DNA from: Octopus sinensis
Taxonomy: Eukaryota
Assembly: GCF_006345805.1 (NCBI RefSeq)
Contig: NC_043007.1
Location: 60,946,001-61,010,000, forward strand
Direction of reading: 5' to 3'
Length of the DNA stretch: 64,000 nucleotides
In this document: in pieces, positions 15,267 to 46,079 of the stretch
Layout: the number at the start of each line of letters is the position of its first letter
Numbering within the stretch: position 1 is the stretch's first letter
Program-made: the position numbers and the translations under genes
Notes under the pieces: generated by a model
The model's database searches: none
What the model was told of the DNA's origin: nothing
What the model saw: the letters and a program-made list of their open reading frames with translations, nothing else

Positions 15267-15414
15267 TCATTCTGCATTGGTGAAGCTAATTTCTTCATCT
15301 AATTTATGTTCTTCAGTAGCTGATGATGGTATATTTTCAAATGAAACTGTTGATTCTGGCGTATTCATTAGAAGAGCATCTTGCATATTTCGAGCATATT
15401 TTTGAGCCTTCTCT
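15267..15414 (-). CDS. bHLH gene last coding exon
   Basis: tttccag|A GAG AAG GCT...GCA GAA TGA; (R)EKAQKYARNMQDALLMNTPES...FTNAE*. Phase 2 matches the preceding exon. Confidence 0.85.
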
Positions 15415-18400: not shown

Positions 18401-21400
18401 TATCACTGCAAAGATGAAATATCCTTGTACTTCAATATGGTGAGTAACTGTGCATAACATACCTGACAACTGTCAAAGAAAAATGTGCTTTGATGATGTT
18501 GCAGTCAACAAGAGTACAACTGGTTCTGTAATCCTATTAGCTGTTAGTGCTTAATATCCACTAACGAATCAAACTGATGAAAGAAATTAACTCTGATGAG
18601 TGAGGATAGGCAACACTGCAATAATGAATACCCATTTAAATAAGTCACAGACTCAGATCAAATATTAGTGATATCTAATGAAAGATAGTGAGATATGAGT
18701 GATTAACAGCTTGAAATAACATGAAAGTAGGTTGTACCTTACTGTGTTTTTGAGTAAATAGTAACAAACTCACTTTTACTCTTATGTCAACAAGAAATAG
18801 TCTATCAGTTATCTTATCAGTCACATGAAAATTTTGAGTTAAATCAGGACAAAGTAGATTCATCACTTTTAATCTCTGTCTATGGTTACTTTCTTTGAAG
18901 AAGAATCTTTCTTGTGTGAACACACATAAGTGTTCTGACCAAACTCTCAATGATGATAACATAGTAATATGCTTATCCATATTGCCATGTTATTTCACTA
19001 CCCAACATTCCACCTGAGATGGGTGCTAAAACTTCACACAACACTAGATTACATCCATTAGATTACTGGAATAGACATCATACATAGTCAACCTATTTCA
19101 GTAGCAGATATATTTATATTCATCAACAACATGAACACATGTCCGGTACACCACCAACTGTCAAGGAATCACAACCACCCACATGTTCCAAAAGATCTAA
19201 TTAGTCACAAGTTCATTTGTTGTGATACAATTGAGAAACCACTTCAAATACCTAATACAAAATGTTAAAGCTTAAGTATTTTGTTACTGATGTATACAAC
19301 AAAAAGAAAACAGCATTGACCATCTGAAGCAAACACATTTGAAGAGTGATCTGTCACCAAATCCATTATTATTGCTCTGAAAATTACTTACTTATAAGGT
19401 CTTTGTTTATCCTCAGACATGTTCCTCCAGGTGTGTCCCATCATTTTACTAATGTGAGAAGTGTGAACACCAGGGTTAGCACTATAATAAATTAAAATAC
19501 AATATCACAATAAGTAAATTACAAAGCTGGCAGTACAACAGCTTTAATAGTTAATGTGTGTGGTCAAGATACTAGAAATAACAGCAAAATCTCTCTCAAA
19601 TGATACAGTTATCCTAGAAAAGGATACACTGAATAATGTAGATAAAGTACTAGCTTTTTCTGGGCAGCAGGATTTTTTTAGTTTTCAACTATTTTGGTTC
19701 AGATTGCACCTGTTGTGTTGGTTTTGAGCAAGAAACTCTCAGGAGTCAACCATAATACTGAGGTCTTTTAGAGATGCTTTTAGGCTGTCCTTGAATGTTT
19801 TCTTTTGCTCTCTCTCTCCCCATCAATCTAAAAGCTCAAAATTCTGCAACAGATTAGTTATAATGAGCATGTAATTTCTAAATAAATAAAAGATTAAGTA
19901 ATACTATAATAATTCTTGGAATTTAGTATTAATTATCATTGTAGGTAAATTAGATAATCCCAAAGATTAAACAACGAAATATTAGGTTTTTTATTATTAA
20001 CAAAACAGGAATTAATAATGGAAGATATATATTCCCAAAGGAATGTGTGACAGAACAAGGTCAGTGATTAGCTTACTCAATAAATTTTCTCCTATTCATC
20101 TGACTGAACATCATAAAACCATTCATCCAGGAAACTCGCCGGTGATCTATTTTAGGGAGGTATTCAATTTTATCTGTTTTCATTTTACTTTGAATAAAAA
20201 TAGAAACAGCTTCAGTTAAACATTCATATTGCAAACAGCTCACATTTCACAAAGTATAATATAATAACTTAACCATTTAGCATTCAGATTACTCTGTAAA
20301 AGTATTTAAAAATTTATTTCATTATATTACATATATAACATGTATTTGGTCCATATTTAACGTAAAATCACATTAAAATACAAATCAAAGACTGAAGAAA
20401 ACAAAAATATAAGAGAGGTGAAAAGAAATAGAAAAAGAAAACATCTATTCAACACCAAGTGCCTCAATTGGTTGTACACCACAAGGTTCAACGGGACCTA
20501 CTGAAGCAAGCCATTATACTCATGGCCCTACCACGAGCGATGGTGAGGCTAAGCTATCAGAAGAGCCAAGCACCATCATGGGCATCACTTGATGCCACAG
20601 TAATGCGAACTGCCAACGATCACAAGAACTTCACTGTTAATGGCCCGGCTACTCCAAACATCTCAAACACCACAGACCAGAAGAAATGGTTTACTGACAA
20701 GTTCAGATACTTAAGGATTTTGTACCATTCGGCTACAGAAGTAGTGACCCTCCCATTTACTGCAGCATCCAGGGTGTGGGAGAGTGCAAAGGAGTCACAA
20801 ACTGCAATGTCCCAGATAAGGCACCTACCTCTTGCCCAGGGACAAAAGGTAAGACCATGTGGTTTCTTCCCATCACTTCAGAATCAAGGGAATATTAACC
20901 TAAGTCAGTGCCTACTTAATGATTAAGTTTAGCTCAGTGACAAGCAAAACGACTAGCATTTAGGTGGCAAGGCAAACCATGAAGGCCAGTGGAGTAAAAT
21001 GTAATGCTTATTTACATTGCATTGTATTAATCACGTGATATCTTGCAGCTTCAAGATTTAGATGATGTGATTGTTTATTTTTAAAATGACATAATAGAGA
21101 AGGTGAGAAGCTAGATCTGGCCAGTTTAATGTTAAAGGATTAAAGAAGTATAAAAAGTATAGCGATAGCTAAAATAGTCAATTTTAACTTTATATGAAGT
21201 CAGTAATGCAATAATTATTATGCATACATTGTACCTTGTAGGTTTGAAAAAAGTGCATCAATCTTCATTTCAGTATACCTAAATATGCAGTTTGCTAGTT
21301 TCTGACAATGTCATGCAAATGTTTGAATGTTTGGACTTTCAAACCAATGTCAGTACAAGATGGATGCCAAACTGACAAAAATGGTTTTCTAATAAAAACA

Positions 21401-24400
21401 ATAATGTCCACGGATTTATATAACTTAATGTTACAAATTTTAAAAACAAATTATTTCAGTTAGATAAATGTTTATAGCCTAGATGCCATCTCTCTTTATT
21501 TCCTGAAACCCATCCAGATGCAGGAAGGATCCCTCACATTTTAACACTATTGTTATTTTCGATAAAATTTTTAAATATTAGAAGAATAGAAATATAAGCA
21601 GTTGGAAGAGCAACTGAGTATGGTCAGGTACAGTATTATATAAAGGCGGTGAATTGATGCAGTCATTAGAGCACCAGGCAGAATATTTTACATTATTTGG
21701 TCTGAGTGCAACAATTTCAAATCTTACTAAGGTCAACTTTGCCTTTCATCCTATTGGGGTAAAAAAAAAATTACAATTGAAAGTAGTGGATTGGTGAAAC
21801 TGTAAAAATGTCAAATCAGATGCCTTTCAGTATTTATTCTGGCACTGTGTTCTCAAATAAAATCCTGCTATGGCCTAGTTGCGCGGTAAAGTTTAACCAC
21901 TTGCCTGTTATACAGCAAAGGCACTACCTTCCTTCCTGGTTAAAAATCATAAAAAGAAAAACAAGCCCACTAAGTTTATAACCATGGTTGCATATATGCA
22001 CATAGCTGCTATTGTTATTGAGTAGGTAATTATAACAAGAACAGACATAGAGGGACAACAGAGGGATTACAGGAAATGCTAATTGAGCCAACCATAGGTT
22101 CTCTAAATAGGTATTTTTCTAGTTCCCATAATAAACAATCTGAATATAATGATGTAAAAAATATTTCTTTAAAAAAAAAATAGCTAAAAATGAAATAAGA
22201 TCAAACCTTTCACAACTGTCAAATGGTTCCTTATCACTAGATGCCTGATCCATCTTCTGACGTCGTATATTGGCCACTTCATGAAACTTCCATTCATAGG
22301 ATTCAAACTGATCATCATCTGTGATAATTCATAACAAAACCTAAGCCCAACAATGACATCTTCATGTGAAAACAACCATGGGTAATATCAAGAAGTTATT
22401 GTGTGTAATATCAGGAAATATGGCATACATACAGTAATAAGAATTTAACTTTTTATCTAACTATTTGGTGCATGTACAAAATGATGAAATGAACATTAAT
22501 TTTCTGAAGAAAATTATTTATTACCTTAAGGTAAAATTAAATAAAACAAATTTCTCATTTGTATATTTGCAATAAGTATTTTTCTAAATTTTATCAACAC
22601 AACTGCACTCTACTCCACTGGAAACCTATCTCTGCAAAATCTGAACTCCTCCTATAACTACTTGTCATTTACTCCCTCTCCTCCTTCTCTTCTATCACTA
22701 TTATTCTTTATATCTTTCACTGTGTATATGTAAATGTGTGGGTATGTGTATAGCAATCCTTTACTCATTGCAAGTCACTAAGCCTAGTATGTGCACTCAT
22801 CCTAAACCTCTTATGTCAACTTTCTCTGTATCTCTCTTTTATGCTCTCTATACAATGTAAAGTGTAACTCTTTTGGTACTAAGGGTGACTCAGACTGCAC
22901 CAGTTGTTCTGGTTTTAGACAAGCAGCTCCTAGGAACTGCTTGTCTCTAAAAGAGATGCTTTTAGATTGTCCTCGAACATCTTCATTTGTTCCTCACCTC
23001 CACTGGCATACTTTCCATGAAGTATTCACCATAGAGGAATTACTTTGGGATGCAATATTCTGACAGGCCCAGGCCATTTCACATGGGCCTTATGCAAGTG
23101 GTTTACAAGTATAGGTTATGTGTGTATGTGTACATACATATTTATATATCATCAGCTTCCTCATAATTTCATTGACTGACTAGTTTTGAACATTGACCTT
23201 CTCACATATACAGTTGACTTAAAATGAAAATGCACAGAACCTAGTGCATTATCACTGCACTTGCTGAAGTTACTCTCATTGTTGTAGGTTTACATCATTT
23301 CAATTGCATAATTTTTCAGAATTACTAGCTAAAAAAAAGTCAAATATTTTGATAACAAAAAATTCTCTCTTCTTCAACAATCCATATCTTCAGTTATCAT
23401 TTCTGTTCCATAATGATAGAAATAACAGATTTATTTCAAAAACTTGTGAAGTACAAGCAGGTTAGTGAAAAACGAGGTCCTGTCATCTTCAGCGGCAGAA
23501 ATCCTCATTATATAACATGAAAAGTCATTATTGATGATGTCTTTCATAGATTAGAGAAGGAATGGTAACACTTATAACATTTTCAGAAATGGCAAAACTG
23601 GAGAGAAATGTATAGGAAAAAACCACAATTTATGGTTTGCTGCAACATATTAAGATCTTCAGTTCCTCAGATAACCAATGATCAGGTGATGTTATCATAT
23701 TGCAAAATTATTCAAGTTTAGGCATTTACAGTGTCATAGGAACCCTACTCAATCAAAGATTAAAATAGGCCCATTAAGTGCTCACGCCACTCACTCAATC
23801 ATCTGTCACACTAATTCCATTCTCGTATGCTTATATACCCACCCACCTTTTCTGCTCCTCTATCCCACTTCTGTCTCTCATATTCACCTTGACCTCATAT
23901 CTCTCTCTCTTTCCCTCTCCCTCTATCTTTCTAGATAAGGAAGCCATGTATTTACCACTTAGCAAAACACTTGTTCATGTCCTTTTATCATACTTTCATA
24001 TCCCTCAGTACCATACCCAACTCAGCTGAGAATACTTCGTAGCCTCACTAGTGCTGGTGCCACAATGAAAGCACCCAGTACACTCGGTGAAGTGGCTGGC
24101 ATTCAGAAGAGCATACAGTTTGTCACAGCAGACATTGGAGCTCAGTGCAACTTTCAGGCTTGTCAGTTCATGTTGAACAGTCTAAACCAAGCCAGCATGG
24201 GAAAAGGGATCTTAAATTATGATGATGATGAGCTACGAGAAGGTAGATATATGGGCCATCCAATTTTAAAAGACACTAAGACAAAGTCATTATTTAACAA
24301 GGGAGCCTCCATGTTGTTGCTCAACCGGCTAAATATTGCTAAAAGAAGAACCAGAGAGAATTAAGAAACACTATTGCTAGGATTATGGTATACAACTATT

Positions 24401-27400
24401 ATGATAATTTTTTAAATACTAGTAAGGAAGAAATACAGTTAATACCCCAGTTTTCTCCTACTTGTTTCATCAATCCAATAGGTATGAAATATGAAGCAGA
24501 TTCTAGAATATAAAGTACCACAAAACAATTGGTTTAGTCTGTACTATCGCTTTGGTTATGACACATAACATCAGACACCAATATTTAAAGAAAGATGATG
24601 ACTAACTCTGACACTAAGCCACACATTTTCAGGGAGAGTAGTAGTTAATTTAATCAACTAGTATTTACTTTATTACTTTGGGGTCAATAAAAATTTGGAG
24701 AGAAACTGTCAACTGAACCAGTCTCAGTATATGAAGAACTCCATGAGAATGAAAAGTAAAATATTAATAAAGATGATAAATCTTTGAATAAAATCTAACC
24801 TTTTTTAACAATGGCACTCCTTAACTGCCTTTGTAAGCTATATTTCAATGGTTGCCCACAATCATCTGGTGAATATCTATCAGAGTAATCACAGTTTGCT
24901 TGATTTATCAATGCTGTCTCTTTGAATGAACCAAGATCACTAGGGTTTGAAAGCATGGTTGGTTGTTTGGTAACTTTCATAAAAGTGACAGGAGACACAG
25001 TGTTAGGAGAGACAAATTTGAGCTCCTCTGCAGGTTCCTCAGATGCTTCAAACTTTTGCCCTTCTTGAACTCCTTTAAAATTTTCCAAGATCTGCATTTA
25101 GAAAATACATAAAAATCATTCAGAAATGTGAATATCACTTAATTTTAAGATTATTATAGAAGCTGAAGCCCTCATCTGTGCAGAATGACCTATTTATTTT
25201 TATCAGAATACAAATCTTATTATCACCTTGTATCTATTCATTTTTACCAACACTATTCCCAGTGGAAATGGTTTTTATTTAAATTTGTGATAAACTACTG
25301 TTCATACAACTGGTTCAAATGCCAATGTTCCTTCTTCACTCACTTGACAGTGCACATATTAATATAGGACTTTGCAGTAAAAATTACCTAAATTACTGGT
25401 AAATCTCATCAATTAACAGCATTTATTATTGTTATTGGTTTTAGTTACTTATGAAGCCCATGCCAATAATGATTGGACAAATTTAATATTTTAGCACAGA
25501 TGTAATTACAAAATAATAAAAAAGTAGCAAATGAAGTCATCAACAAATATAACAATATGTCATGTAAAAAAGCACCCATTACACTCTTGGAGTGCATTAG
25601 GAAGGACATCCAGTAGTAGAAACCATTCCAAATCAGACTGGAACCTGGTGCAGCTCTCCGGCTTACCAGTTCTAGTCAAACTGTCTAACCCATGCCAGTA
25701 TGGAAAGTGGATGTTAAATGATGATGATGATGATGGAAGTTTGCAAAAAAAATTTGTAAATAAACAAAAGGTAAAAAAAATCATTGCTAAGAAAATCATT
25801 GAAGACAAGCAATTACCTGAGGCAACATTGGGTCACCAGTAAGAAGAGCTGGGTGCTTCAGTTTATATTCAGATATCAAACATGGAGTTTGAGTAACTGT
25901 AATAACCTCGCCAGGAGCAGATTCAGCAAACTAAAAATTTTATAGGAAACTGAATAAATAGCATATTAAACTAGTCGTATTCTTTTTAAAGTGAATTTTA
26001 GAAATGTTTTCCTGTCGTTGATAAAAAACAGGTAATTTATATGAAGTTTGCATAAGAAATGTAATGCTGTTGGCAACAGCCACAGACAACCTGACTTTAA
26101 TTCATTACAACATGAATCTTAAAAGAAGCCTCCATCCCCTGATGCTCATAACAAGTCCTACAATGTCCTGACCTGGACCTCCAGAGCTTACTGCCCAATG
26201 TTCAAGCTTGTTCACAATGTCAATGAGGGATACATTATAAAGTTCATCTGTTTACTGTATTTCCATACTCTACTGCTTGATGCTTGAAATTTTCAGCAAT
26301 GTTATCATGATACTTAAACAAAAACTGAAATAGACAGGGTGGTTCAGAAGTTCTCATATAACAATCTTTTTATACCTTTCATAATAATGAGTTGCTTATG
26401 CACGAGCATACTGTAATTTTATGTACTTCTACTGTTAGTAATATTACGACAATTATAACATATCAAAGTAATATTAAGACAATTATAACATATCTTACCG
26501 TAGGATCATGAAGTACAACTTTTTGTTCTAAATTTAATTCTGGATTTTTAAGTTCTATAGAAAGAGGAAAATATATTGAGAGACTATTACATAATTACAG
26601 ACATATTTTTATTTATTATTATGCCCCTCTATACAATATATTAGAATTGTATTAAAGTTAATCATAGCATACTCAAACTATTGTGTAGCTGAACAGAAAG
26701 TGTTAGTATCCTGGCTAAAGAATAGTGAATTTGTATTCTATCATTAATTTAATGCTGTGAGCAATATTCTGAAACACATCAACATAAATAGTAAAAGAGA
26801 AGGTAAGAAAAGAGAGTAGGGATTATCTATATATATATAAGAGAGAGAGAGAGAGATGTGCACGCACATGCATTTCCTTATGAATTCAGAAACTGAGTTG
26901 CCGATTTTGACATATGCAGCTCCTATTAAAATATCTAACCCATGCCAACATGGAAAACGGACATTAAATGATGATGATGATGATGAATTGAATGCAATTG
27001 TTTTAAGTCAGAAGAGTTAGAATGCTAAATATTTATTAAAAAAAAATCTAAAACGCACTAAATATCTTTTATCTAATAATTGCAATAAGCCCACCCCGCA
27101 CCTTAATAACAGATTTCTTATGTGCCCATATAAAAATGAAACTATAGATTGTTAATTGGATGAATAGGAAATAGTGTAAAGTGTTTCAAAAGACAAAGTA
27201 ACATTCATTAGCACTAACCTGTTTCACAAGTTGGAGTCACAATACTAAATGTATAGGTACCTACAATCAATCCATCATTGGGAAGGAAAATATTTAATGT
27301 ATTGTCATTATCAGTTTCACAGGTGAAGTTGAAATCTGGAGAAAATTGGTTCCCTTCTGTGTCTATTACTGTGGAACAAGGTTTCATGGCGTTGTTTGAA

Positions 27401-30400: not shown

Positions 30401-33400
30401 GCTGGGGCTGTTTATGCAAAACTGGTGTAGGATACAGCCGTGAACTCTCTTTATTTGCCGGGTCTTCACAGTCACAGCATATCTTCAGAGGTCTTAGTCT
30501 TTCGGCATTGCCTCTGTGAGGCCCAACGTTTGAAAGTCATGCTTGACCACCTCATCCCATGTGTTCCTGGGTCTACAGCTACCCTGGATTCCTTCAACTG
30601 TTTGGGAGTGGCACTTCTTCACATCCATCCGTAGTACATGACCATACCAGCGCAAACGTCTCTCTTGCACGCCATATCCAATGCTTCTTATGTCCAATAT
30701 TTCTCTCAGGGCGTTTACACTCTGTCGTGTGTGCACACTAACATTACACATCCAGCGGATCGTGCTAGCTTCATTTCTTTCAAGCCTACACGTGTCCTCC
30801 ACAGTCACAGCCCATGTTTCACTGCTGTGAAGCATGGCAGTTCGCACACATGTATCGTACAATCTACCTTTCACTCTGAGCGAGAGGCCCTTTGTCACCA
30901 GTAGGGATAGAAGCTTTCTAAACTTTGCCCAGGCTATTCTTATTCTAGTGGTAACACTCTCAGAGCATCCATCCCCACTACTAACTTGGTCACCTAGATA
31001 GTGGAAGCTATCAACTACTTCTAGTTCTACACATGTATATATAAATATATGACAGGCTTCTTTCAGTTTCTGCCTTCCAAATTCACTCCACAGGAGCCAG
31101 CTGGGCAGTACTGGCATTGGCCACATTTGGATGGTGCTTTTTATGTGCCACCAGCACTGAAGCTAGTCGGGGGGGGGGGGGGGGGGGGGGCTGGCATCAA
31201 CCATGTTCAGTTGGTACTTTTTTTACGTACCACGAGCATGAGAAGCCAGTCAAGCAACACTGGCATTGATCGACACATGAATTGTGCTTATTGTGTGCCA
31301 CCAGCACGAGTGCCAGTCAGGTGACACAAACTCATTGGAGTGGCAGAAACAGCACAGAGTTCTAGACTAAATGACTGATCGATTTCTGGTGGTTGACTTT
31401 GCAATTCATCCTCAGGATCAATAAAATAAGTGCTACATTTTTAAGCAATAATGACCTTCTTCTATAAATATGTGATGCCATGCTAATGCAAGAAAACATT
31501 GTTTCAAGAAATTTAAAATATTACCAAATCACAAGTTGATGAACATTCATTCTTCCACTGTTCGTATGTATCATAACCCCACAAGGCTCTTCTTATATCT
31601 GCAATTGTACAATTATGTTGATTAGAACAGTATTTGCAAAATACTACATACAAGAAACAATAATGTATCTAATTTCTGTGTAGATATAAGAAAAGCAAGA
31701 GACATGTAAGGAGCTATACAGAGTCAGAGTTACATACAAACAAATAAATACCTTCTCTGCTGAGTCTGACAGTTAGGAACATTTTGGATAAGTCCACTGT
31801 TACTCTAAGCTCTTTGCAAACTTGGTTGATCATCTTCTCCAGGTATACAATATAACAAATGGCACGTTGCATCGTCACTACCTAAAATCAATTCAATATC
31901 ATAAATGGAAAATGTTTGTTCAGCATGGTTATAAAATGTAAAATATTTTAAAAGGACAATGACTATGAGATTAAGATACAACGCTAGTGATTACATGGTG
32001 TGTTCATATCATACAATAGCTATTGTGTTCCTAAATCTGCTCATAAGTGGTTCCTACAAGTAGCACTCATTCTTCTAAAGGAATGGTGAACAATACATCA
32101 TCATCATCGTTTAACGTCCGTTTTCCGCGCTAGCACGGGTTGGACGGTTCGACCGGGGTCTGGGAAGCCAGGGGCCGCTCCAGGCTCCAGTCTGATTTGG
32201 CAGAGTTTCTACGGCTGGATGCCCTTCCTAACGCCAACCACTCCGTGAGTGGATTGGGTGGGTGCTTTTTACGTGCCACCTGCACAGGGGCCGGGGGGTC
32301 CGGCATTGTTCGCAATCGGCAACTGGGTCCAGGGTACTTTGAATGGGTAGGGGGTATGTGGAATTGCTGCAGAAAGCAGCCCGGGTCTTTGCAGTCACAG
32401 CATATCTCCAGAGATCTCGGTCTTTCGCCATTGCCTCAGTGAGGCCCAATGCTCTGAGGTCATGCTTGACTACCTCATCCCATGTCTTCCTGGGTCTACC
32501 TCTCCCCCTGATACCTTCAACTGTTTGGGAGTGGCACTTCTTCACACATCTCTCTTCATCCATCCGCAGCACATGACCATACCATCGCAAGCGTCGCTCT
32601 TGCACACCACATCTGATGCTTCTTATATCCAGCATTTCTCTTAGGATGCTTACACTCTGTCTTGCATGTACACTGACACTACACATCCAGCGGATCATGC
32701 TAGCTTCATTTCTTTCAAGTCTACGCATGTCCTCTGCAGTCACTGCCCATGTTTCATTACCGTGAAGCATGGCAGTTCGCACACATGCATCATACAATCT
32801 ACCTTTCGCTCTGAGGGAGAGACCTTTTGTTGCCAGTAGGGGTAGGAGCTTTCTGAACTTTGCCCAGGCTATTCGTATTCTAGTGGTGATACTCTCTGTG
32901 CATCCACCTCCGCTACTAACTTGGTCACCCAGGTAGCGGAAACTATCCACTACTTCTAGTTTCTCTCCCTGGAGTGTGATGGAATCTGTTTTCTGAGTGT
33001 CTGTTGTGTCTATTGTCCCTGTGCATCTGCCGCACATGAAAGCTATCTTATCTGTTAATTTCCCTTTAATGTTGCTGCACCTCTTATGTGTCCATAACTT
33101 ACATTGGGTGCATCTTATGGAGTTTCTACCTGTACCTTTCCTACAGATTGAGCAGGGCCACCTACCCGAGGGGGTGTGTGCTGAGTACCTCTTGCTGCTT
33201 ACTAATACTTTGGTCTTTGCTACATTTATTCTAAGGCCCTTTGATTCCAACCCTTGCTTCCACACCCGAAATTTCTCTTCTAGTTCCGGTAGTGATTCTG
33301 CTATGAGAGCTAGGTCATCGGCATAGAGGAGCTCCCAGGGGCATCCCGTTTTGAATTCCTCTGTTATTGCCTGAAGGACTATGATGAATAAAAGGGGACT

Positions 33401-36400: not shown

Positions 36401-39400
36401 GTGAAAGGATGTTTGTGTGTGAATGGCTATACTCCATAGTAGTGTGACATGAGCTCTGAATGTGTAGACTGGAGAGAAATGAAGGTAGTATGCTCCATTG
36501 GATGTGAAACATCAGTGCATATGTATGGCAAAGTGCAAATGTATTGAGAGAAAAATTGGGCATAAGAGGAATCAAATGTAGCATGCAAGAGAGAAGACTT
36601 TGTTGGTTTGGACATGTGATGCGTATGAATGAAGACAGCTGCATAAAGAAATGCCAATCACTGAAAGTGGATGGTACCTGCAGAAGAAGGCAACCCAGGA
36701 AGATGTGGGATGAAGTGGTAAGGACTGATCTCAGGATGTTGGGCCTCACAGAGGAAATGACAATGGACCAAGATGTCTGGCGATATGAAGTTCTTGAGAA
36801 GACTCACTCATGTCAGTGAAACTGAGTTCTAGAAGCACTGTGTCCCACCCACACTTAATAAGAAAACTTCTCACACACACTACCACAATAAACCAAACTA
36901 CATCTCTTCTCTTATTCACATTTCTGCTTCATGCACTATGCTTCCTGCCCACTCCCCAATCCTGTCCTCTTGGCCCTGTGTCACTGTATCATTGCTCTCA
37001 GTTTGCCCCTGACCTGTGTGTTCCACCCACATGCCGTCTCACTGCATTATTGCTATCTGCTATCCCCCGACCTGTATGTTTCACCCACACATAACAAGAA
37101 ACCTTTTCACTCACCCTACCTCAACAACCCAATCTACATATCCACATCTCTTCTCTTCCTCACATTTCCTCCTTCATACACTATGCCTTGCTCTCACTCC
37201 CCAATCCTGTCCTCACGGCCCTGTTCCTCTGTATCATTGCTATTTGGTAGCTCACCCACCCATCCAACTCTATATATACCCAAGTTTTTGCCCCACCTCT
37301 ACACTTTTTAATCACACTTCCTTGCAATATCCTGCCCTTACATTATGACATTCAAACCTCAAGGGCATGTCCTGGCACTTGCCACCATCTATATCTCTCT
37401 CTCTTCCTATACTCAACCATCCCATTTATATTTTGATCCCCGTCCCATGTGAGTATGTCTGGAATTTTGTCACCATCTCTATCCTGCTGTCTTCCACTCT
37501 CTCCTTCTCATGTATTTCCCTCAGGTTGGGTAACCATGTATTTCCTTTGCAGTAGCACACCTGTTTCTGTCTTCATTCCTGAACACAATCTCTCTCTGGC
37601 TGAGTAACCTTGTACTTCCTCTACAGCAAGACACCAGTTTCTGTCTCTTTCTCTCACTATAACCATTCATCATCCGACACAAGATCACCTCATCTAATGC
37701 CCCCTCCTCTCTTGAAAGTTTTTTCTTCTTTGTCTTATCTTGCAAGTACTTGGTGACCCTGTCAGTGCAGGTGCTACTTAAAAGCACCCAGTCTACACTG
37801 TAAATTGATTGGTATTCAGCTGTAAAAACCTTACCAAAACTGACCTCACCTGTGCTTATTATCATCATCTTCGTTTAGCGTCCGCTTTCCATGCTAGCAT
37901 GGGTTGGACGGTTCAACTGGGGTCTGGGAAGCCAGAAGGCTGCACCAGGCCCAGTCTGATCTGGCAATGTTTCTACGGCTGGATGCCCTTCCTAACGCCA
38001 ACCACTCCATGAGTGTAGTGGGTGCTTTTTACGTGCCACCTGCACAGGTACCAGACAAGGCTGGCAAACGGCCACGATCGGATGGTGCTTTTTACGTGCC
38101 ACCTGCACAGAGACCAGTCAGGGCAGCGCTGGCAACGGCCATGTTCGGATGGTTCTCTTGATAATAATAATAATAGTCCTTTCTACTGGAAGCACAAAAC
38201 ATGCATGAATTGCATAATTTATATGAACCGATTGATCCTGGCTCTCTGAGTGGTTGGTGTTAGGAAGGGCATCTAGCTGTAAAAATCCTGCCAAAACAGT
38301 CACAGAAGTCTGGTGCAGGGTTCTGCCTGGCCGGCTTTTGTGAAACCATCCCACCCATGCTAGCATGGAAGGTGGACATTACACAATGATGACTCCTATA
38401 AAGCCGCTCTAGAAAGAAATTATGAGTTATCACCATCATTATCATTTTAACGTCCACTTTTCCTATTGAATTGGTCAGAGAGAATCTATTGAGGTGGATT
38501 TTCTACAATCAGATGCCTATCTTGTCTCCAACCCACACTTATTTCCAAGTAAGGTAGTACTATCCCATGGCTAAGCATGCTTTCCCATAAGACTAGTAAC
38601 AACTACCACGCAATATCAAGTCAAGGAGATACACATACACATATACAACATGCTTCTTTCAGTTTCCATCTACCAAATTTATTCACAACACTTTGGTCAG
38701 TCAGGTGGTATAGTAGAAGAAACTTGCTCAAAGTTCCACACAAGGGAAGAGAACCAGAAACTACATGATTGAGAAGTGAACTTCTTAACTACAGTCATGT
38801 GTATTATTTTTAAATTTGTGAATATAAAACAAGAAAAAAGACAAAAAAAAAATCATATTCAAAACCTTAGTTCCTTTAGAATATTCTGAATATCCAGGGA
38901 TTTGTTTATACAATTTATTCATTAATTCATTTAAAGTACGGTGACGAACTCTAGAAAGACAAAGAGAGAGAGGAGAAAAATAAAAATAAAAAGCAATAAA
39001 AAGAAATAGAATTTATTTAAATTTTCAACATTACAAGGTAATAAATTATTGTTACATTATGAGAGTTTTTGTTTCAATGTTACATTGTACAACTGAATAT
39101 CTTTATAGATTTCAGCCATTTGTTTTATATACAGTATTTTCATAGACAGGAAGAGGTGTTAGCCAGTCTAGTTTCACTCCCCTGTTGAGACTTCATCAGC
39201 AACTAAATACGTCTTTAACTTGACTACAGAGACACTTATAAATCCACTATTACTTAGGGCTGAGTAAATCAGAAACACTGGTTTGTTTATATAACATTAT
39301 TGATAGCTAGTTCAATTAAAAAATAACTGGTGTACTAACAGTCTTTTCCCCATTAAATCTATATTGTACTATAGAATATATACAGAGATAGATTAAAATG

Positions 39401-41711
39401 ACTACTCTCAACTGTTTATGGTCAAGCCTGAGGCAATGGAGACTTCCAGTGTTCTCAGCCCCTGGACCATATCCTTACTCACCACTATCAGGGCAGAGAT
39501 GGCTATTTGCAAGTGTGAGACCCCATGAGTCAAAGTGACTGTTCCAGCAAATCTCCCTCACCATCCTCCGGGGCAACACCTTTCCCATTTTGTCTGTTGG
39601 ATCCACAAGGCAGTCTGAATTATAAGAAATCGAAAGAATGTGAGAATTTCATAGCTAATTCTTTTTTTCTATTTCTTCTTTCCTTTTTCTTGTGGTTTCA
39701 TTTAAATATTATTTTTTCTAATAGTAAATATCATTGTTATGTTAAAATAAAAGCAAACTAAATATTAAAAAAAAATTTTAAATAAAAATACCTTTCATTT
39801 TCTCTGTGCTTTTGCATCAGTTTCTGTGAAGGTTTTTGTGCTTGTTGTCTTTGTTTTGAATACTGATATTGGACATAATTTGAATGTGCATGTAGCACAA
39901 CAGGAGACTCAAGGAGTGGGTAATTTCCACGGGGTCTTCGCTTTTTAGAAGACTGAAAAGCATTTTGAATATAAAATATATAAAATTCTTTATATAAATA
40001 GCAATTAGTTTGTTAGAAGTTTTTACATTTCTAATTCAAAATAATTTAATTCTAATTTACTACAATTATTTTTTCAATGAAATAAATACACCAATTTTTT
40101 TTCACACTAAACAAATCAATGAGGAGAGTCTCTACATGGTCACTTAACATGCTAAAAATAACAGCTAAATTCACACACACATATTACCATCTTAAGATAA
40201 AGAAAATGGACATATTGAATAACATGGCCTTGGGTTTCCTACTTATGGGAAAAAATAGGATAGTCACAACTGAAATTTTTTTTATCATAGGTGTACCCAG
40301 AGTTGACTTGCAATGAACCAGTAAGAGATGCTAAATGCAGGTAAACTGTAATGAGATGCTTTGCTCTAAAGTCATTAATATTTTAATCAAAATGAAACTA
40401 AACTTATTGTAAATAATATTTATTTTATCAATTTCACACACATATAAATGTATACAAAATTTAATATTAAACTCTTTTCTTTTCAAAGTATTATCACTCA
40501 TGTATGTATGTATATATATATAGGGTCATCTCATAAATAATGCGGTTTTTTTCAATTGCATGAACTAAAAGTCAGAGGGGAATGGGATAAACTACCTGCA
40601 TCATATTGCTATAAAAACAGGTACTAATTTTATCCCGTCCTTATTCTTAGTGCAATTTTTGAAGAGTGCAGTTCATTTTAACAGTTTCAGCATATTTTGC
40701 TTTATGAGTTCAATAAAGACAACAACAACACAACAGAAAGTACAAGGAATATTAATGCAGTATGTGGGAATTAGACAATAAGTGTAAGCCAGTGTCAATA
40801 GTAGTTCCAGAAATTCCAAGCAGGAAATATAGCCTAGAAGATGAGCGTCTTCCTGGAAGGTCTATAGAGCTCGATGAGGACGTCCGGCAAACCCTGGTGA
40901 AACAAAATCCCATTGTAACTGTTGAGAAACTAGCAGAGAAGCTTGGATTTGGTCATTCAACCAGTCATTCAAATCAGGGGTGGAAGAAAAACGACCATCT
41001 TTGGTTTCAAGACAAAAGGTGTTCTTCCATCAGGATAATGCTCAGCCACATGGAACGAGGATGACATTCGAAAGGCTGGAACAGTTTGAATGGGAAACGA
41101 TGCACTACCCACCATATTCGCAGAACATTGCTCCATCTGATTATCATTTATTCCTCAGTCTTCAAAATCATTTGGACAGTAAAAATATGAATTCTGTAGA
41201 CAAGGTTAGAACAGTACTGGAGGAGTATTTTTCATCATGGACAAGTGATTTTGGAAGAGGGGCCTTAGAAGTCTACCAGTTAGATGGAAGTGCATTGTAG
41301 AAAATGAAGGAGAGTATATTTTAGATTCAAAAAGAATTTTATCTTAATTCTGAAATATAAAACAAGCATAATGGCGGTGCCCCAGCATGGCCACAGCTTG
41401 TGAGTTGAAACTAGATAAAAAATTTTAAAAAATTAAAAACACATTATTTATGGGATGACCTAATATATATAGTTATACAATAATTGAACACATTCTAAAT
41501 CAAGGAATTATTTTACCTTTTTGAAGACATTCTTTTTAAAGTGCCTCAATTGATTGTTAGAAATACCATTAAACCTCTGTTTCTTAGAGTCAATAATTAT
41601 GTCTTGTTCTTCAATGCTGCTAGAACTATTTACATGGATCTCACTGATATATTCTGGAACCTTTTGGTCTTCATGAATGAGATGCGGTTTAGCTTTAAAT
41701 TCATCAAGGCA
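15267..41711 (-). CDS. Multi-exon orphan bHLH transcription factor (11 exons, 467 aa plus unresolved N-terminus)
   Basis: All 11 exons have AG/GT boundaries and matching phases, 1404 nt total with one terminal stop. bHLH: QKHRENERVRHRTLNELMNKLYKQIPGYSEYSKGTK/VVTMQRAICYIVYLEKMINQVCKEL. Confidence 0.88.
17930..18208 (+). mobile_element. CR1-clade LINE 3' end
   Basis: NTRGHAYKVRKQ...RKHFFTLRVAEAWNKLPASVV (TRGH..K...R..FF..RV...WN.LP motif), followed by an (ATT)n tail. Confidence 0.85.
18670..19400 (-). mobile_element. Degenerate Gypsy-type gag/protease remnant
   Basis: FHVTDKITDRLFLVDIRVKVSLL resembles retroviral aspartyl protease (FLVDTGA.VS); heavily decayed. Confidence 0.45.
20450..20920 (-). 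mobile_element. CRE-type non-LTR retrotransposon restriction-like endonuclease remnant
   Basis: Minus strand reads DGKKPHGLTFCPWARGRCLIWDIAVCDSFA...AEWYKILKY...FEMFGVAGP...QLSLTIARGRA with internal stops. Confidence 0.8.
22207..22318 (-). CDS. bHLH gene exon
   Basis: tcacag|AT GAT GAT CAG...TGT GAA AG|gtttga; (D)DDQFESYEWKFHEVANIRRQKMDQASSDKEPFDSCE; phases 1 to 2. Confidence 0.85.
24800..25091 (-). CDS. bHLH gene exon
   Basis: atgcag|ATC TTG GAA...AAA AAA G|gttaga; ILENFKGVQE...KYSLQRQLRSAIVKK; phases 0 to 1. Confidence 0.85.
26256..26324 (-). CDS. bHLH gene exon
   Basis: tatttcag|TTT TTG TTT AAG...AAT ACA|gtaaac; FLFKYHDNIAENFKHQAVEYGNT; phases 0 to 0. Confidence 0.8.
26499..26527 (-). 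CDS. bHLH gene micro-exon (29 nt)
   Basis: aatttag|AA CAA AAA GTT GTA CTT CAT GAT CCT ACG|gtaaga; (E)QKVVLHDPT; phases 1 to 0. Confidence 0.7.
27261..27420 (-). CDS. bHLH gene exon
   Basis: tgtttcaag|GCT TCA GAT...ATT GTA G|gtacct; ASDIESTSNN...FLPNDGLIV; phases 0 to 1. Confidence 0.75.
27470..27700 (-). mobile_element. SINE family A, full-length copy including 3' tail
   Basis: Head to tail on - strand, ending ttgtcccctctatgtttagccccttgtgagtattaaagaaat. Confidence 0.8.
29692..29714 (-). CDS. bHLH gene micro-exon (23 nt)
   Basis: ttttgtttaacag|AG CTA CTT CAC TAT TCC AAG CCA|gtaagg; (E)LLHYSKP. Supplies the phase 1-to-0 bridge the model needs. Confidence 0.65.
30008..31030 (-). mobile_element. 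5'-truncated RTE LINE (post-RT region, 3' UTR, ATG-repeat tail)
   Basis: LEVVDSFHYLGDQ...RIRIAWAKFRKLL...ERRLRWYGHVLRM; same family as 32.1-34.7 kb. Confidence 0.9.
31752..31881 (-). CDS. bHLH gene exon encoding helix 2
   Basis: gattttag|GTA GTG ACG ATG CAA CGT GCC ATT TGT TAT ATT...GAA G|gtattt; VVTMQRAICYIVYLEKMINQVCKELRV...; K..T...AI.YI..L helix-2 pattern. Confidence 0.9.
32095..34737 (-). mobile_element. Young, 5'-truncated RTE-clade LINE
   Basis: Endonuclease tail (QHRLIISDF), one frameshift near 34540, intact RT, CpG-rich 3' UTR, (ATG)n tail. Confidence 0.95.
32228..34492 (-). CDS. RTE reverse-transcriptase ORF (754 aa) with Cys-rich post-RT finger
   Basis: KGKGD...NYRGIKLL, QFGFVPGRSTTDAIF, FVDLEKAFDRV, GVHQGSALSPLLF, LLYADDL; then WPCSIC...CTQCKLWTHKRC...CGRC. 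Confidence 0.9.
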   Translation of the reverse strand: MLSATDRVCGWCKVPSRPRITWWWNSAVDKAICKKRRAWKAWKDGGSRELYQIAKREAGRQVYIAKDVAEKKKFANVQRREDQRAEVFRIARQCVRENSDVIGEKCVRMDDGALAFTASEKKETWRSHYERLLNEENEWEEESLPNVDPVEGPATRIDSSLVDKAIKDMKPGKAPGLSGITAEMLKTAGYVGYTIVTRIVNQVVHNGVIPNDWCSSTIVNCYKGKGDALDRNNYRGIKLLDQVMKVSEKVITHLIRERICLDEMQFGFVPGRSTTDAIFLVRQLQEKYLAKDKPLYIAFVDLEKAFDRVPRSLIWWSMRKLEIEEWLIRAVQALYREAVSKVRIGNEYSEEFRVEVGVHQGSALSPLLFIIVLQAITEEFKTGCPWELLYADDLALIAESLPELEEKFRVWKQGLESKGLRINVAKTKVLVSSKRYSAHTPSGRWPCSICRKGTGRNSIRCTQCKLWTHKRCSNIKGKLTDKIAFMCGRCTGTIDTTDTQKTDSITLQGEKLEVVDSFRYLGDQVSSGGGCTESITTRIRIAWAKFRKLLPLLATKGLSLRAKGRLYDACVRTAMLHGNETWAVTAEDMRRLERNEASMIRWMCSVSVHARQSVSILREMLDIRSIRCGVQERRLRWYGHVLRMDEERCVKKCHSQTVEGIRGRGRPRKTWDEVVKHDLRALGLTEAMAKDRDLWRYAVTAKTRAAFCSNSTYPLPIQSTLDPVADCEQCRTPRPLCRWHVKSTHPIHSRSGWR
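35190..37860 (+). mobile_element. Older degenerate RTE LINE with pyrimidine-rich 3' region
   Basis: GVHQGSVLSPL, CPWELLYADDL, RRLCWFGHVMRM with stops and frameshifts; inverted relative to the 32.1-34.7 kb copy. Confidence 0.88.
37860..38380. mobile_element. Two adjacent, oppositely oriented RTE-tail elements (family C SINE or RTE 3' ends)
   Basis: 37860-38160 (-) and 38225-38380 (+) share ggatgcccttcctaa and ccatgctagcatgg motifs in inverted orientation. Confidence 0.8.
38866..38950 (-). CDS. bHLH gene exon encoding end of basic region, helix 1 and loop
   Basis: Long pyrimidine tract tttctag|A GTT CGT CAC CGT...ACT AAG|gttttg; (R)VRHRTLNELMNKLYKQIPGYSEYSKGTK; phases 2 to 0. Confidence 0.9.
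39159..39206 (-). ncRNA. Decayed minimal hammerhead-like motif
   Basis: TTAGTTG-CTGATGA-AGTCTC...GGAGT-GAAAC-TA-GAC-TGGCTAA. Stem I pairs with 3 G-U, but stem II is mismatched and the triplet is GAC. Confidence 0.45.
39792..39952 (-). CDS. bHLH gene exon ending in the basic region
   Basis: cttttcag|TCT TCT AAA AAG CGA AGA...GAA AAT GAA AG|gtattt; SSKKRRPRG...MQKHRENE; phases 0 to 2; KKRRPR is NLS-like. Confidence 0.88.
40519..41465 (+). mobile_element. Internally deleted mariner transposon
   Basis: TIRs tagggtcatctcataaataatgcgg / cacattatttatgggatgaccta; remnants SLEDERLPGR..., FHQDNAQPH, HYPPYSQNIAPSDYHLF. Confidence 0.9.
41517..41711 (-). CDS. bHLH gene, most 5' confidently placed coding exon
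   Basis: tttcatttcag|TGC CTT GAT GAA...TTC AAA AAG|gtaaaa; CLDEFKAKPH...KKNVFKK; phases 0 to 0. Confidence 0.8.
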
Positions 41712-45770: not shown

Positions 45771-46079
45771 AAACAATTTAAAGAAAGACCGTCTGGTGCA
45801 TATAATCTTAAAATGTTAAAATAAGGAAATTGCACAATAATTTGATATAACATAATTAAATGCTTGAGTAAATAATAAAAATAAACCTCGGCGAAGCTTC
45901 AGCTTAAATTTGTAAAACAGTCGAAGGCTTTCTTAAATGTGAAGTCAAAATATGCACTAGCATTGTAAAGCAAAGTAACTATAACGTGTAAAATCAAATT
46001 CAAATGTGACAGTCAAAGTTTTCCGAGTGTCAAAACATTTTACCCATACAGCATTTTATCCGTTGACATTTTTCAGCTG

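What the first reader, a model, noticed from the sequence alone, without database searches (positions are those of the whole stretch)
15267..41711. Orphan bHLH protein with a C-terminal HMG-box-like segment: possible invertebrate MEIOSIN/STRA8-type factor
Seen: the reconstructed protein has a bHLH near the N-terminus, a Ser/acidic middle, and a C-terminal block KYSLQRQLRSAIVKK...FHEVANIRRQKMDQASSDKEPFDSCEREKAQKYARNM. Its K.PF-x9-KY spacing matches HMG helix 3 (K.PY-x9-KY), and LRSAI resembles helix-1 R..I. Helix 1 (RHRTLNELMNKLYKQI) resembles STRA8 (RHRATL..LFNNLRKTV, from memory). Known: bHLH plus HMG is the MEIOSIN architecture, and MEIOSIN/STRA8 are generally described as vertebrate meiotic initiators. 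Inferred, weakly: a distant homolog. The conserved HMG Trp is absent (QKM), so the resemblance may be coincidental.
Basis: partly seen in the sequence, partly recalled or inferred. Interest (0 to 1): 0.78.

Follow-up and report, generated by a model that had tools for sequence, protein, structure and literature searches.

The report
Octopus ortholog of meiosis initiator MEIOSIN
This octopus gene encodes a protein with a bHLH domain and a genuine SOX-like HMG box that is the mollusc counterpart of vertebrate MEIOSIN (BHMG1), so this meiosis-entry regulator predates vertebrates, although oyster and octopus databases already carry the BHMG1 name.

Summary
The full gene gives the 601-aa Octopus sinensis protein XP_036363449 (LOC118765447, "uncharacterized"). 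Thirteen GT-AG coding exons lie between 41740 and 15267, and a probable 7-nt first coding exon lies at 51814. The skipped exons (20187-20077, 19481-19392) plus the last exon form a true HMG box (Pfam 54 bits; the fold matches SOX, SRY and SSRP1 boxes). The bHLH (residues 119-184) passes Pfam and keeps a DNA-contacting basic region.

Orthology to vertebrate MEIOSIN is supported by four lines:
- The same two-domain architecture runs from molluscs through brachiopod, annelid, priapulid, echinoderms, hemichordate and amphioxus to newt and vole MEIOSIN.
- The HMG boxes form one clade apart from SOX (91/88).
- The bHLH domains form one clade (90/75).
- Domain introns share position and phase.

STRA8 shares one intron, does not group with the family, and is not detectable in the octopus genome. 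The oyster ortholog ("CgBHMG1") is testis-biased. Novelty is limited by existing annotation.

The parts
51808..51814 (-). Probable first coding exon end: ATGGAAG (Met-Glu plus the first base of Asp3) followed by donor gtaagc
   Evidence: Only match to ATGGARG|GT in the 22 kb upstream of exon 2. Context is aaaacaATGGAAG|gtaagcta. About 0.17 matches are expected by chance (my arithmetic: 22,260 positions x 2/4^9). Needed to give the MED... start of XP_036363449. Not confirmed by RNA.
41517..41740 (-). Coding exon 2 (residues 3-77), N-terminal region predicted disordered
   Evidence: Exact spliced mapping of P0001, acceptor ttctcatttcag, donor gtaaaata; pLDDT <50
39792..39952 (-). Coding exon 3: KKRRPRG basic patch and the start of the bHLH basic region (..LMQKHRENE), ends in phase 2
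   Evidence: The phase-2 intron falls in the same alignment column in Lingula, Priapulus and amphioxus.
38866..38950 (-). Coding exon 4 (85 nt): end of the basic region, helix 1 and loop (RVRHRTLNELMNKLYKQIPGYSEYSKGTK), ends in phase 0
   Evidence: Homologous exons are 82-91 nt with the same phases in four other species. Pfam HLH 32 bits over residues 124-173. AlphaFold helix 118-146.
31752..31881 (-). Coding exon 5: bHLH helix 2 (VVTMQRAICYIVYLEKMINQVC...)
   Evidence: AlphaFold helix 159-184, pLDDT about 66-82; conserved Y169 and L173
31525..31598 (-). Coding exon 6 (DIRRALWGYDTYEQWKNECSSTCDL)
27219..27420 (-). Coding exon 7, Ser/acidic linker
   Evidence: predicted disordered
26499..26554 (-). 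Coding exon 8, linker
25817..25930 (-). Coding exon 9, linker
24800..25091 (-).
22207..22318 (-).
Evidence: The motif is conserved in cephalopods and bivalves and absent outside molluscs. It forms a single low-confidence helix 458-472.
20077..20187 (-).
   Evidence: The intron after helix 1 shares column and phase in all five MEIOSIN-family genes mapped.
19392..19481 (-).
   Evidence: Homologous exons are 90 nt (93 in Priapulus) with identical phases in Lingula, Priapulus, amphioxus and vole MEIOSIN.
15267..15414 (-). Last coding exon: HMG helix 3 (KEKAQKYARNMQDALLMN), acidic tail, stop codon
   Evidence: The HMG-only AlphaFold model has three helices and matches solved HMG boxes.

Best explanation
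The window holds the single-copy Octopus sinensis ortholog of vertebrate MEIOSIN (BHMG1). It encodes a 601-aa transcription factor with an N-terminal bHLH and a C-terminal SOX-class HMG box, joined by about 310 residues of predicted disorder.

Shown here: the gene model, both domains, and common descent with vertebrate MEIOSIN.

[quoted passage not shown] The HMG box would bind and bend DNA through the minor groove. The bHLH would dimerise. Unlike vertebrate MEIOSIN, the octopus bHLH keeps the DNA-contacting basic residues (His5, Glu9, Arg10, Arg12, His13), so it probably also reads an E-box-like site. No STRA8-type bHLH is detectable in the octopus genome, so the protein probably works as a homodimer or with another bHLH partner. 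That would make STRA8-independent action the ancestral mode, and the STRA8 partnership with a degenerate basic region a vertebrate derivation.

My confidence is about 0.9 for orthology and about 0.5 for the meiotic-entry role. The figure given below is for the whole statement.
For: Gene model: P0001 maps letter for letter onto 13 GT-AG exons, and the gene is single copy in the genome.

Domains: Pfam HLH 32.0 bits (cutoff 20.7) and HMG_box 54.4 bits (cutoff 25.4). The best PDB sequence matches are SRY, SOX9 and SOX2. AlphaFold gives a helix-loop-helix at pLDDT 66-82. The HMG-only model matches solved HMG boxes with probability 1.00, rmsd 1.3-2 A and target-normalised TM up to 0.85.

Family: a mollusc profile searched against 1.84 billion representatives finds bHLH-then-HMG proteins of 423-1044 aa in brachiopod, annelid, priapulid, three echinoderm classes, hemichordate, amphioxus, newt 'meiosis initiator protein' and vole BHMG1. 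The vole locus abuts a SIX gene, as expected for mammalian BHMG1 (PMC4863877).

Trees: the HMG boxes of the family form one clade against 65 other closest HMG boxes (SOX-type, SSRP1, multi-HMG), with SH-aLRT 97 in the quick tree and UFBoot 91 / SH-aLRT 88 in the careful tree. The bHLH domains form one clade at 90/75, with a topology that mirrors the species tree.

Introns: two HMG introns (phase 2) and the pre-helix-2 intron (phase 0) share column and phase in octopus, Lingula, Priapulus, amphioxus and vole MEIOSIN. The basic-region phase-2 intron is shared exactly by the four invertebrates and lies at the equivalent place in vole. At least 13 other octopus HMG-box matches and most other octopus bHLH matches are uninterrupted across the domain.

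Signatures: W/C-[MIV]-N-G-[FY]-x-[ML]-F in HMG helix 1, and ..TK before helix 2.

Basic region: H, E, R, R, H are invariant across invertebrate phyla. Glu9 is lost in newt and vole, and the vertebrate HLH is below the Pfam cutoff.

No STRA8: PF23175 gives 0 matches in the genome at E<=1.

Expression: the oyster ortholog LOC105327228, labelled 'BHMG1', has FPKM 44-63 in mature male gonad, 1.1-1.9 in mature female gonad and 4-10 at stage 0. It clusters with PRDM9, ZCWPW2 and SoxH, and the pattern repeats in C. sikamea (PMC12111275 supplement). A citing paper calls CgBHMG1 'a factor involved in meiosis' (PMC8945556). A spliced oyster transcript exists.
Against: There are no expression or functional data for octopus itself.

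The oyster data show testis bias but not which cell stage expresses the gene. Low ovarian expression fits completed meiotic entry, but it also fits a male-differentiation role.

The bHLH tree's outgroup lacks SOHLH, TCFL5 and Myc/Max-type sequences, and its support is moderate (90/75). HMG clade support is moderate (91/88) on only 73 columns, with long branches for amphioxus, Diadema and Priapulus.

The vole basic-region intron cannot be aligned exactly.

No synteny with SIX5 was found, since the octopus SIX genes lie on unplaced scaffolds.

DNA binding and dimerisation are inferred from residues only.
Confidence: 0.6

Rival explanations
1. The gene is a MEIOSIN ortholog by descent, but in molluscs it works mainly in male sex differentiation or spermatogenesis rather than as a general trigger of meiotic entry.
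For: The oyster ortholog is about 30- to 45-fold higher in mature male than in mature female gonad, and it clusters with DMRT1, SoxH and Sox-like. Oyster authors file CgBHMG1 among 'sex-related genes'.
Against: Mature oyster ovaries hold oocytes already arrested in meiosis I (statement in PMC12111275). Low ovarian expression is therefore what a transient meiotic-entry factor would show. In adult vertebrates MEIOSIN was detected in testis only. The gene co-clusters with the meiotic genes PRDM9 and ZCWPW2.
Confidence: 0.25
2. The invertebrate gene is the pro-ortholog of both MEIOSIN and STRA8. On this view STRA8 arose in vertebrates by duplication of a MEIOSIN-like gene and then degraded its HMG box.
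For: STRA8 has a bHLH and is described as having an HMG-like domain (PMC13637641). It shares the phase-0 intron directly before helix 2. Like the family, it also has a phase-1 intron 35-45 codons later. No STRA8-type bHLH is found in octopus.
Against: STRA8 bHLHs do not group with the family in the tree. STRA8 lacks the basic-region intron and both HMG introns. The octopus protein does not hit Pfam bHLH_STRA8. Only mammalian STRA8 was examined.
Confidence: 0.12
3. The architecture arose independently: a lophotrochozoan SOX/SRY-like gene that captured a bHLH and is unrelated to MEIOSIN. This is what UniRef's 'Sex-determining region Y protein' label would suggest.
For: By raw sequence score, the octopus HMG box is as similar to SOX boxes (PDB SOX9/SOX2, 37 bits) as to vertebrate MEIOSIN boxes (51-54 bits against the mollusc sub-profile, similar to SOX-type hits).
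Against: The family HMG clade excludes SOX-type boxes. There is an unbroken taxonomic series of two-domain proteins. Intron positions and phases are identical in both domains. At least 13 octopus SOX-type HMG boxes are intronless across the domain. The NG[FY] helix-1 signature is shared.
Confidence: 0.03
4. It belongs to a known germline bHLH family (SOHLH or TCFL5) that gained an HMG box.
For: Mollusc 'SOHLH1/2' genes with gonad expression have been reported (PMC6529535).
Against: The published mollusc SOHLH accessions (C. gigas XP_011439966, EKC27190; O. bimaculoides XP_014781106, XP_014781566) are different genes from this family's XP_011425869 and XP_014772121. Family bHLHs cluster with vertebrate MEIOSIN bHLHs. 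The paper reports no HMG domain in Cg-SOHLH.
Confidence: 0.03

Closest known systems
Vertebrate MEIOSIN / BHMG1 (meiosis initiator protein; Ishiguro et al. 2020, as cited; Shimada et al. 2026, PMC13637641)
   Same: N-terminal bHLH and C-terminal HMG box separated by a long disordered linker. The HMG boxes form one clade and so do the bHLHs. Both HMG introns and the pre-helix-2 intron are identical in position and phase. They share the NG[FY] helix-1 signature and the ..TK|helix-2 junction. A mollusc ortholog shows testis-enriched expression.
   Different: Octopus and the other invertebrate members keep a canonical basic region (H5, E9, R10, R12, H13) and pass Pfam HLH. Newt and vole MEIOSIN have lost Glu9 and fall below the cutoff, and zebrafish and hagfish lack the bHLH altogether. 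No STRA8 partner is detectable in octopus. The linker is unalignable. Molluscs have extra motifs (YxWKFH..RRQK; SSPT[IV]DSTT, which cephalopods have lost). No SIX5 neighbour was found.
Oyster CgBHMG1 (LOC105327228; Yue, Li and Yu 2021, Gene 790:145692) and the database records 'basic helix-loop-helix and HMG box domain-containing 1-1' of Octopus vulgaris (CAI9730171) and Argonauta hians (GAB1609726)
   Same: These are direct orthologs. O. vulgaris is 600/601 identical. Argonauta is 71% identical to P0001 in alignment A1 and the oysters 29-30%, while the bHLH and HMG boxes themselves are nearly invariant across molluscs.
   Different: The O. sinensis record for this very gene is still 'uncharacterized protein LOC118765447'. 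The names appear to come from similarity-based annotation. I found no paper that tests orthology or discusses what it means for the origin of the MEIOSIN-STRA8 system.
STRA8
   Same: A germline bHLH protein with a reported HMG-like region. It shares the phase-0 intron before helix 2.
   Different: It has a different Pfam family (PF23175), which the octopus protein does not hit. It does not cluster with the family. It lacks the HMG introns and the basic-region intron. It is not found in the octopus genome.
SOX / SRY HMG-box transcription factors
   Same: The HMG box is of the sequence-specific class. These are the best PDB sequence and fold matches.
   Different: They fall outside the family's HMG clade. 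SOX helix 1 reads PMNAFMVW, against SWMNGFMMF here. At least 13 octopus SOX-type boxes are intronless across the domain. SOX proteins have no bHLH.

Membership tests
MEIOSIN / BHMG1 | N-terminal bHLH plus C-terminal HMG box in one polypeptide | tested here: met
   Pfam HLH 32.0 bits (residues 124-173) and HMG_box 54.4 bits (residues 507-564), both above the curated cutoffs. AlphaFold shows both folds, and Foldseek matches solved HMG boxes.
MEIOSIN / BHMG1 | HMG box groups with MEIOSIN HMG boxes rather than with SOX or other HMG families | tested here: met
   One clade holds all 22 labelled members, including newt and vole MEIOSIN. Support is SH-aLRT 97 (quick) and UFBoot 91 / SH-aLRT 88 (careful), and the clade is monophyletic in 90% of bootstrap trees. 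65 SOX-type, SSRP1 and multi-HMG boxes fall outside.
MEIOSIN / BHMG1 | bHLH groups with MEIOSIN bHLH | tested here: met
   The family, including three vertebrate MEIOSINs, lies on one side of a 90/75 split, with a topology that follows the species tree. Limitation: the outgroup was 19 intronless octopus bHLHs plus STRA8, with no SOHLH, TCFL5 or Myc-type sequences.
MEIOSIN / BHMG1 | Shared gene structure (intron positions and phases inside the two domains) | tested here: met
   Three introns share column and phase in octopus, Lingula, Priapulus, amphioxus and vole MEIOSIN. The fourth is identical in the four invertebrates and equivalent in vole. Homologous exons are 82-91 nt and 90-93 nt.
MEIOSIN / BHMG1 | Germ-cell expression at meiotic entry | not testable with these tools
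   There are no octopus expression data. The oyster ortholog is testis-biased in two species (PMC12111275 supplement). Public O. sinensis testis and ovary RNA-seq exists (SRP499429) but could not be mapped here.
MEIOSIN / BHMG1 | Heterodimerises with STRA8 through the bHLH | tested here: not met
   No STRA8-type bHLH is found in the octopus genome (PF23175, 0 matches at E<=1). This feature is also absent in zebrafish and hagfish MEIOSIN, so it does not define the family as a whole. The interaction itself is not testable here.
MEIOSIN / BHMG1 | Conserved neighbourhood (next to SIX5 in mammals) | tested here: inconclusive
   The vole locus abuts a SIX gene. The octopus SIX1_SD matches are all on unplaced scaffolds and none is on contig C11. 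The amphioxus and Lingula loci have other neighbours.
STRA8 | Pfam bHLH_STRA8 (PF23175) domain | tested here: not met
   P0001 has no PF23175 hit at E<=0.1, whereas all but one of the 120 listed STRA8 hits carry it.
STRA8 | bHLH clusters with STRA8, and the gene structure is shared | tested here: not met
   STRA8 (100/100 on its own) nests among unrelated octopus bHLHs. Only 1 of the 4 domain introns is shared.
SOX / SRY | HMG box within the SOX clade, with the RPMNAFMVW-type helix 1 | tested here: not met
   The box falls outside the SOX-type boxes in the tree. Helix 1 reads SWMNGFMMF.
Mollusc 'SOHLH1/2' (Qian et al. 2019) | Identity with the published accessions | tested here: not met
   The published accessions are XP_011439966, EKC27190, XP_014781106 and XP_014781566. 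This family's are XP_011425869 and XP_014772121.

The most novel reading that the evidence does not exclude
MEIOSIN is a bilaterian invention, not a vertebrate one. The ancestor would have had a two-domain MEIOSIN whose bHLH bound DNA itself, and it would have acted without STRA8. Vertebrates later added STRA8 as a partner and let the MEIOSIN basic region decay. Octopus and other invertebrates would then still trigger meiotic entry with this single factor, acting as a homodimer or with a generic bHLH partner. That would give the first candidate for a conserved animal 'meiosis switch' transcription factor outside vertebrates.
Probability: 0.4. Interest if true: 0.75.

Novelty: new member of a known kind. 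Interest (0 to 1): 0.5.

Why it matters
How germ cells decide to enter meiosis is understood at the transcription-factor level mainly in mammals (MEIOSIN-STRA8). The latest comparative study (Shimada et al. 2026, PMC13637641) stops at hagfish and says that more distant species were not examined. It therefore leaves open whether the two-domain form and STRA8 independence are ancestral.

The data here bear on both points:
- Two-domain MEIOSIN orthologs occur in protostomes and invertebrate deuterostomes, so the bHLH+HMG form is ancestral.
- Those orthologs keep a DNA-contacting basic region that vertebrates lost.
- Octopus has no detectable STRA8.

This gives a concrete, testable candidate regulator of meiotic entry in molluscs. 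It is relevant to oyster sterility and triploidy work and to cephalopod culture. It also corrects misleading database names ('uncharacterized', 'Sex-determining region Y protein'). The finding is tempered by existing BHMG1 labels in oyster and in two cephalopod annotations.

Tried and rejected
That explains the misleading 76% identity. It was replaced by exact mapping of P0001.
2. A regular-expression hunt for helix 2 found nothing useful.
3. Foldseek on the full-length AlphaFold model (mean pLDDT 43) gave nothing below E=2. It became informative only with the isolated HMG domain.
4. The third word-indexed search, with the family-wide alignment A2, saturated on common words and returned only octopods. 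No cnidarian or arthropod members could be sought this way.
5. I tested whether the family equals the published mollusc 'SOHLH1'. It does not, because the accessions differ.
6. Synteny with SIX5 was uninformative.
7. Literature look-ups of LOC and XP identifiers for octopus, C. virginica and Aplysia, and of run SRR14492791, found no papers. Yue et al. 2021 is not held.
8. Z-linkage: the O. sinensis Z chromosome is LG20 and the window is on contig C11, so the gene is probably autosomal. This rests on contig numbering only.
9. The spacing to the would-be Trp is off, there is no profile hit, and the segment is absent from non-mollusc members.
10. Two look-ups by exact protein (Diadema, newt) found no genomic record.

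Full report
OBSERVATION. The gene is on the minus strand. FHEVANIRRQK...DSCE lies in an exon at 22318-22207, and EKAQKYARNM in the last exon. Reading all minus-strand open frames showed two further frames that look far more like an HMG box. One is ..HRRVSWMNGFMMFSQMNRRKFI (20187-20077). The other is ANPGVHTSHISKMMGHTWRNMSEDKQRPY (19481-19392). Joined to the last exon they give Pfam HMG_box at 58.9 bits (E=6.7e-16).

GENE MODEL. A homology search with a rough draft returned Octopus sinensis XP_036363449 (LOC118765447, 601 aa, 'uncharacterized protein'). A splice-aware exact mapping places it letter for letter on 13 GT-AG exons between 41740 and 15267. Only the first 7 nt of the CDS are missing. 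The window is G000:C11:60,946,001-61,010,000 of a 2.72-Gb assembly, and the gene is single copy there. The O. vulgaris protein differs at one residue, H98R.

DOMAINS. In the full protein, Pfam HLH scores 32.0 bits (residues 124-173, cutoff 20.7) and HMG_box 54.4 bits (507-564, cutoff 25.4). The nearest solved sequences to the HMG box are SRY, SOX9 and SOX2. AlphaFold on the mollusc alignment predicts a helix-loop-helix (118-146, 159-184; pLDDT 66-82), three HMG helices, and disorder elsewhere. Foldseek on that whole model was uninformative. The isolated C-terminal 120 residues fold into three helices. The first 41 PDB matches, and 44 of the first 45, are HMG boxes: SSRP1, SOX9, SOX2, SOX17, SOX11, SRY and others, with probability 1.00 for the leading matches, rmsd 1.3-2 A for the best, and target-normalised TM up to 0.85. 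It is conserved in cephalopods and bivalves, degenerate in caenogastropods, and absent from every non-mollusc member. It is a lineage-restricted linear motif, not a second or degenerate HMG box.

RELATIVES. Cephalopod, gastropod and bivalve proteins share nearly invariant bHLH and HMG sequences. A HMMER profile of nine mollusc proteins was run against 1.84 billion cluster representatives, followed by local sub-profile scans and name look-ups. This yields proteins with an N-terminal bHLH and a C-terminal HMG box in the following taxa:
- further molluscs (Patella, Haliotis, Lottia, Aplysia, Bulinus);
- Lingula (brachiopod), Owenia (annelid) and Priapulus;
- the echinoderms Diadema, Antedon and Holothuria;
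- Saccoglossus (hemichordate) and Branchiostoma (amphioxus);
- newt 'meiosis initiator protein' and vole 'Basic helix-loop-helix and HMG box domain-containing protein 1'.

Mactra (bivalve), Capitella (annelid) and Watersipora (bryozoan) matched through the bHLH only, so their records may be incomplete or truncated. Pfam confirms both domains in most of the invertebrate two-domain proteins. Holothuria's HLH is just under the cutoff (19.0 against 20.7 bits) and Priapulus's HLH is seen only by the family sub-profile. Vertebrate MEIOSIN's HLH is sub-threshold (15.9-17.9 bits) and matches only the helix-2 half.

ORTHOLOGY TESTS.

(a) HMG tree. The tree holds 105 HMG boxes: 22 labelled family members plus the 83 other closest HMG boxes from that search. 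All family members fall in one clade, together with 17 unlabelled rows that are fragments or MEIOSIN-like vertebrate proteins. Support is SH-aLRT 97 in the quick search and UFBoot 91 / SH-aLRT 88 in the careful search, and the clade is monophyletic in 90% of bootstrap trees. Amphioxus plus vertebrates get 100/99. Sampled outgroup members are SOX-type N-terminal boxes, SSRP1 and multi-HMG proteins.

(b) bHLH tree. The tree holds 22 family bHLHs, five STRA8s and 19 intronless bHLH domains taken from the octopus genome. The family lies on one side of a 90/75 split, ordered as the species tree: vertebrates, amphioxus, ambulacrarians, protostomes. STRA8 (100/100 on its own) sits among the octopus paralogs. 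The outgroup lacks SOHLH, TCFL5 and Myc-type sequences, which I could not obtain.

(c) Gene structure. I fetched the loci of amphioxus, vole BHMG1 (which abuts a SIX gene), Lingula and Priapulus and mapped their exons exactly. Every intron was then projected onto one alignment:
- The phase-2 intron after HMG helix 1 and the phase-2 intron after ..(K/R)PY fall in the same column in all five species, enclosing a 90-nt exon (93 nt in Priapulus).
- The phase-0 intron right after ..TK/TR, before helix 2, is shared by all five.
- The phase-2 intron in the basic region, right after ..HRxxE, is column-identical in the four invertebrates. The vole has a phase-2 intron one 91-nt exon upstream (against 82-88 nt), in a region too degenerate to align.

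As a control, at least 13 other octopus HMG-box matches and most other octopus bHLH matches are uninterrupted across the domain, and none shows the paired breaks.

(d) Signatures. HMG helix 1 reads W/C-[MIV]-N-G-[FY]-x-[ML]-F in the family, against P-M-N-A-F-M-V-W in SOX.

STRA8. I used my recollection of mouse STRA8 only as bait, and real STRA8 records came back. The vole STRA8 gene shares just the phase-0 intron before helix 2, plus a phase-1 intron a similar distance downstream. It lacks the basic-region intron, and its later part has no introns at the HMG positions. The octopus protein does not hit Pfam bHLH_STRA8, and the octopus genome has no match to that profile at E<=1.

WHAT THE RESIDUES SUGGEST. 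Across invertebrate phyla the basic region keeps H-R-x-x-E-R-x-R-H, that is His5, Glu9, Arg10, Arg12 and His13. The profile aligns to Max's HHNALERKRR. Solved group A and group B bHLHs score alike (29-34 bits), so no class assignment is possible. Newt and vole MEIOSIN have lost Glu9. From general knowledge of bHLH-DNA contacts I infer that the invertebrate protein can bind an E-box-type site through its own bHLH dimer, whereas the vertebrate bHLH has become mainly a STRA8-docking module, as Shimada et al. report.

EXPRESSION AND PRIOR KNOWLEDGE. The meiosis literature treats MEIOSIN as a vertebrate gene. Shimada et al. [quoted passage not shown] A sea-anemone preprint lists 'Meiosin' among meiotic genes lost in deep-sea lineages. 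In oysters, however, the ortholog (XP_011425869/70 = LOC105327228) is labelled BHMG1 in the supplement of PMC12111275. Its FPKM values are 4.1-9.8 in stage-0 gonad, 1.1-1.9 in mature female gonad and 44-63 in mature male gonad, in the same cluster as PRDM9, ZCWPW2 and SoxH. The log2 fold changes are 5.5 in C. gigas and 4.4 in C. sikamea. That table cites Yue, Li and Yu 2021 (Gene 790:145692) on 'CgBHMG1'. That paper is not held. [quoted passage not shown] A spliced oyster transcript is present in a public run. The O. vulgaris and Argonauta records carry the BHMG1 name. No paper mentions the octopus, C. virginica or Aplysia loci. The family is distinct from the published mollusc 'SOHLH1/2'.

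CONCLUSION. The window encodes the octopus ortholog of MEIOSIN/BHMG1. Its supporting observation (which residues form the HMG box, and the missing Trp) was wrong because two exons were skipped. The STRA8 link is not supported.

Orthology is well supported (about 0.9). A role at meiotic entry is inferred from orthology and oyster testis-biased expression (about 0.5). A male-differentiation or spermatogenesis role is the main alternative.

The gene is a new, so far uncharacterised member of a known family. The wider point has not, as far as I could find, been made in the literature: two-domain MEIOSIN with an intact basic region, and without STRA8, is the ancestral bilaterian state. It can be tested directly with existing octopus gonad RNA-seq (SRP499429).

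Noticed in passing
window 32231-34546 (minus strand), inside the 7-kb intron between the helix-1 and helix-2 exons; related pieces at 30497-31162 and 45510-45815: A 772-aa open frame of a retrotransposon: Pfam RVT_1 at 103.8 bits plus a weak PHD-like finger. It has the same orientation as the host gene. A truncated, related C-terminal copy lies 1 kb downstream, and another RT fragment (RVT_1, 33 bits) lies at 45.5 kb. This explains the GC-rich block at 30-38 kb.
   Followed up: partly
window 10475-11107 (+ strand; open frame from 10340): A single-exon open frame encoding an EF-hand protein (EF-hand_7 at 54 bits). It lies about 4 kb beyond the 3' end of the MEIOSIN-like gene, on the opposite strand. 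By eye it resembles invertebrate sarcoplasmic calcium-binding proteins.
   Followed up: partly
window 47759-48556: A very regular tandem array of 30.8 copies of a 26-bp unit (98% matches). It is open in all three + frames simply because of the repeat.
   Followed up: partly
window about 42635-42745, 37878-37991, 32114-32227, 30043-30138, 34886-34996 and others: A short interspersed repeat recurs in the introns and flanks. Its translation reads ..GVRKGIQP / EGHPAVETLPDQ.. / ..ASQTPVEPSNPC. It is probably a SINE-like element. It was seen only in the ORF listing.
   Followed up: no
window 8969-9241 (+): An open-frame fragment ending ..HPAYSPGLSPTDYYFFKHLD.., which by eye looks like the C-terminus of a mariner-type transposase. 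It has no Pfam hit at E<=0.001.
   Followed up: partly
Family alignment (P0010 242-250, P0005 209-217, P0044 287-295; octopus residues about 243-254): A second linker motif, SSPT[IV]DSTT, is conserved in gastropods, bivalves and the brachiopod Lingula but has been lost in cephalopods (octopus reads KPCSTVIDTEGN). An RNKRKQ basic motif shows the same pattern.
   Followed up: partly
L002 (vole BHMG1) and L005 (vole STRA8): STRA8 and MEIOSIN share the phase-0 intron immediately before bHLH helix 2 and a phase-1 intron 35-37 codons later. The helix-2 exons are 106 and 112 nt. This hints that the two partners could be old paralogs, even though their bHLHs do not cluster in my tree.
   Followed up: partly
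Database records of the family: UniRef names many family members 'Sex-determining region Y protein' or 'transcription factor Sox-14 / Sox-17-alpha-like', and RefSeq calls them 'uncharacterized'. Given the HMG tree, these labels are misleading.
   Followed up: yes
G000 contig C11 versus O. sinensis LG20: Cephalopods have a Z sex chromosome (LG20 in O. sinensis, chr16 in O. vulgaris; bioRxiv 10.1101/2024.12.09.627507). The window lies on contig C11 (77.5 Mb), so this testis-biased gene family member is probably autosomal. That inference rests on contig numbering only.
   Followed up: partly
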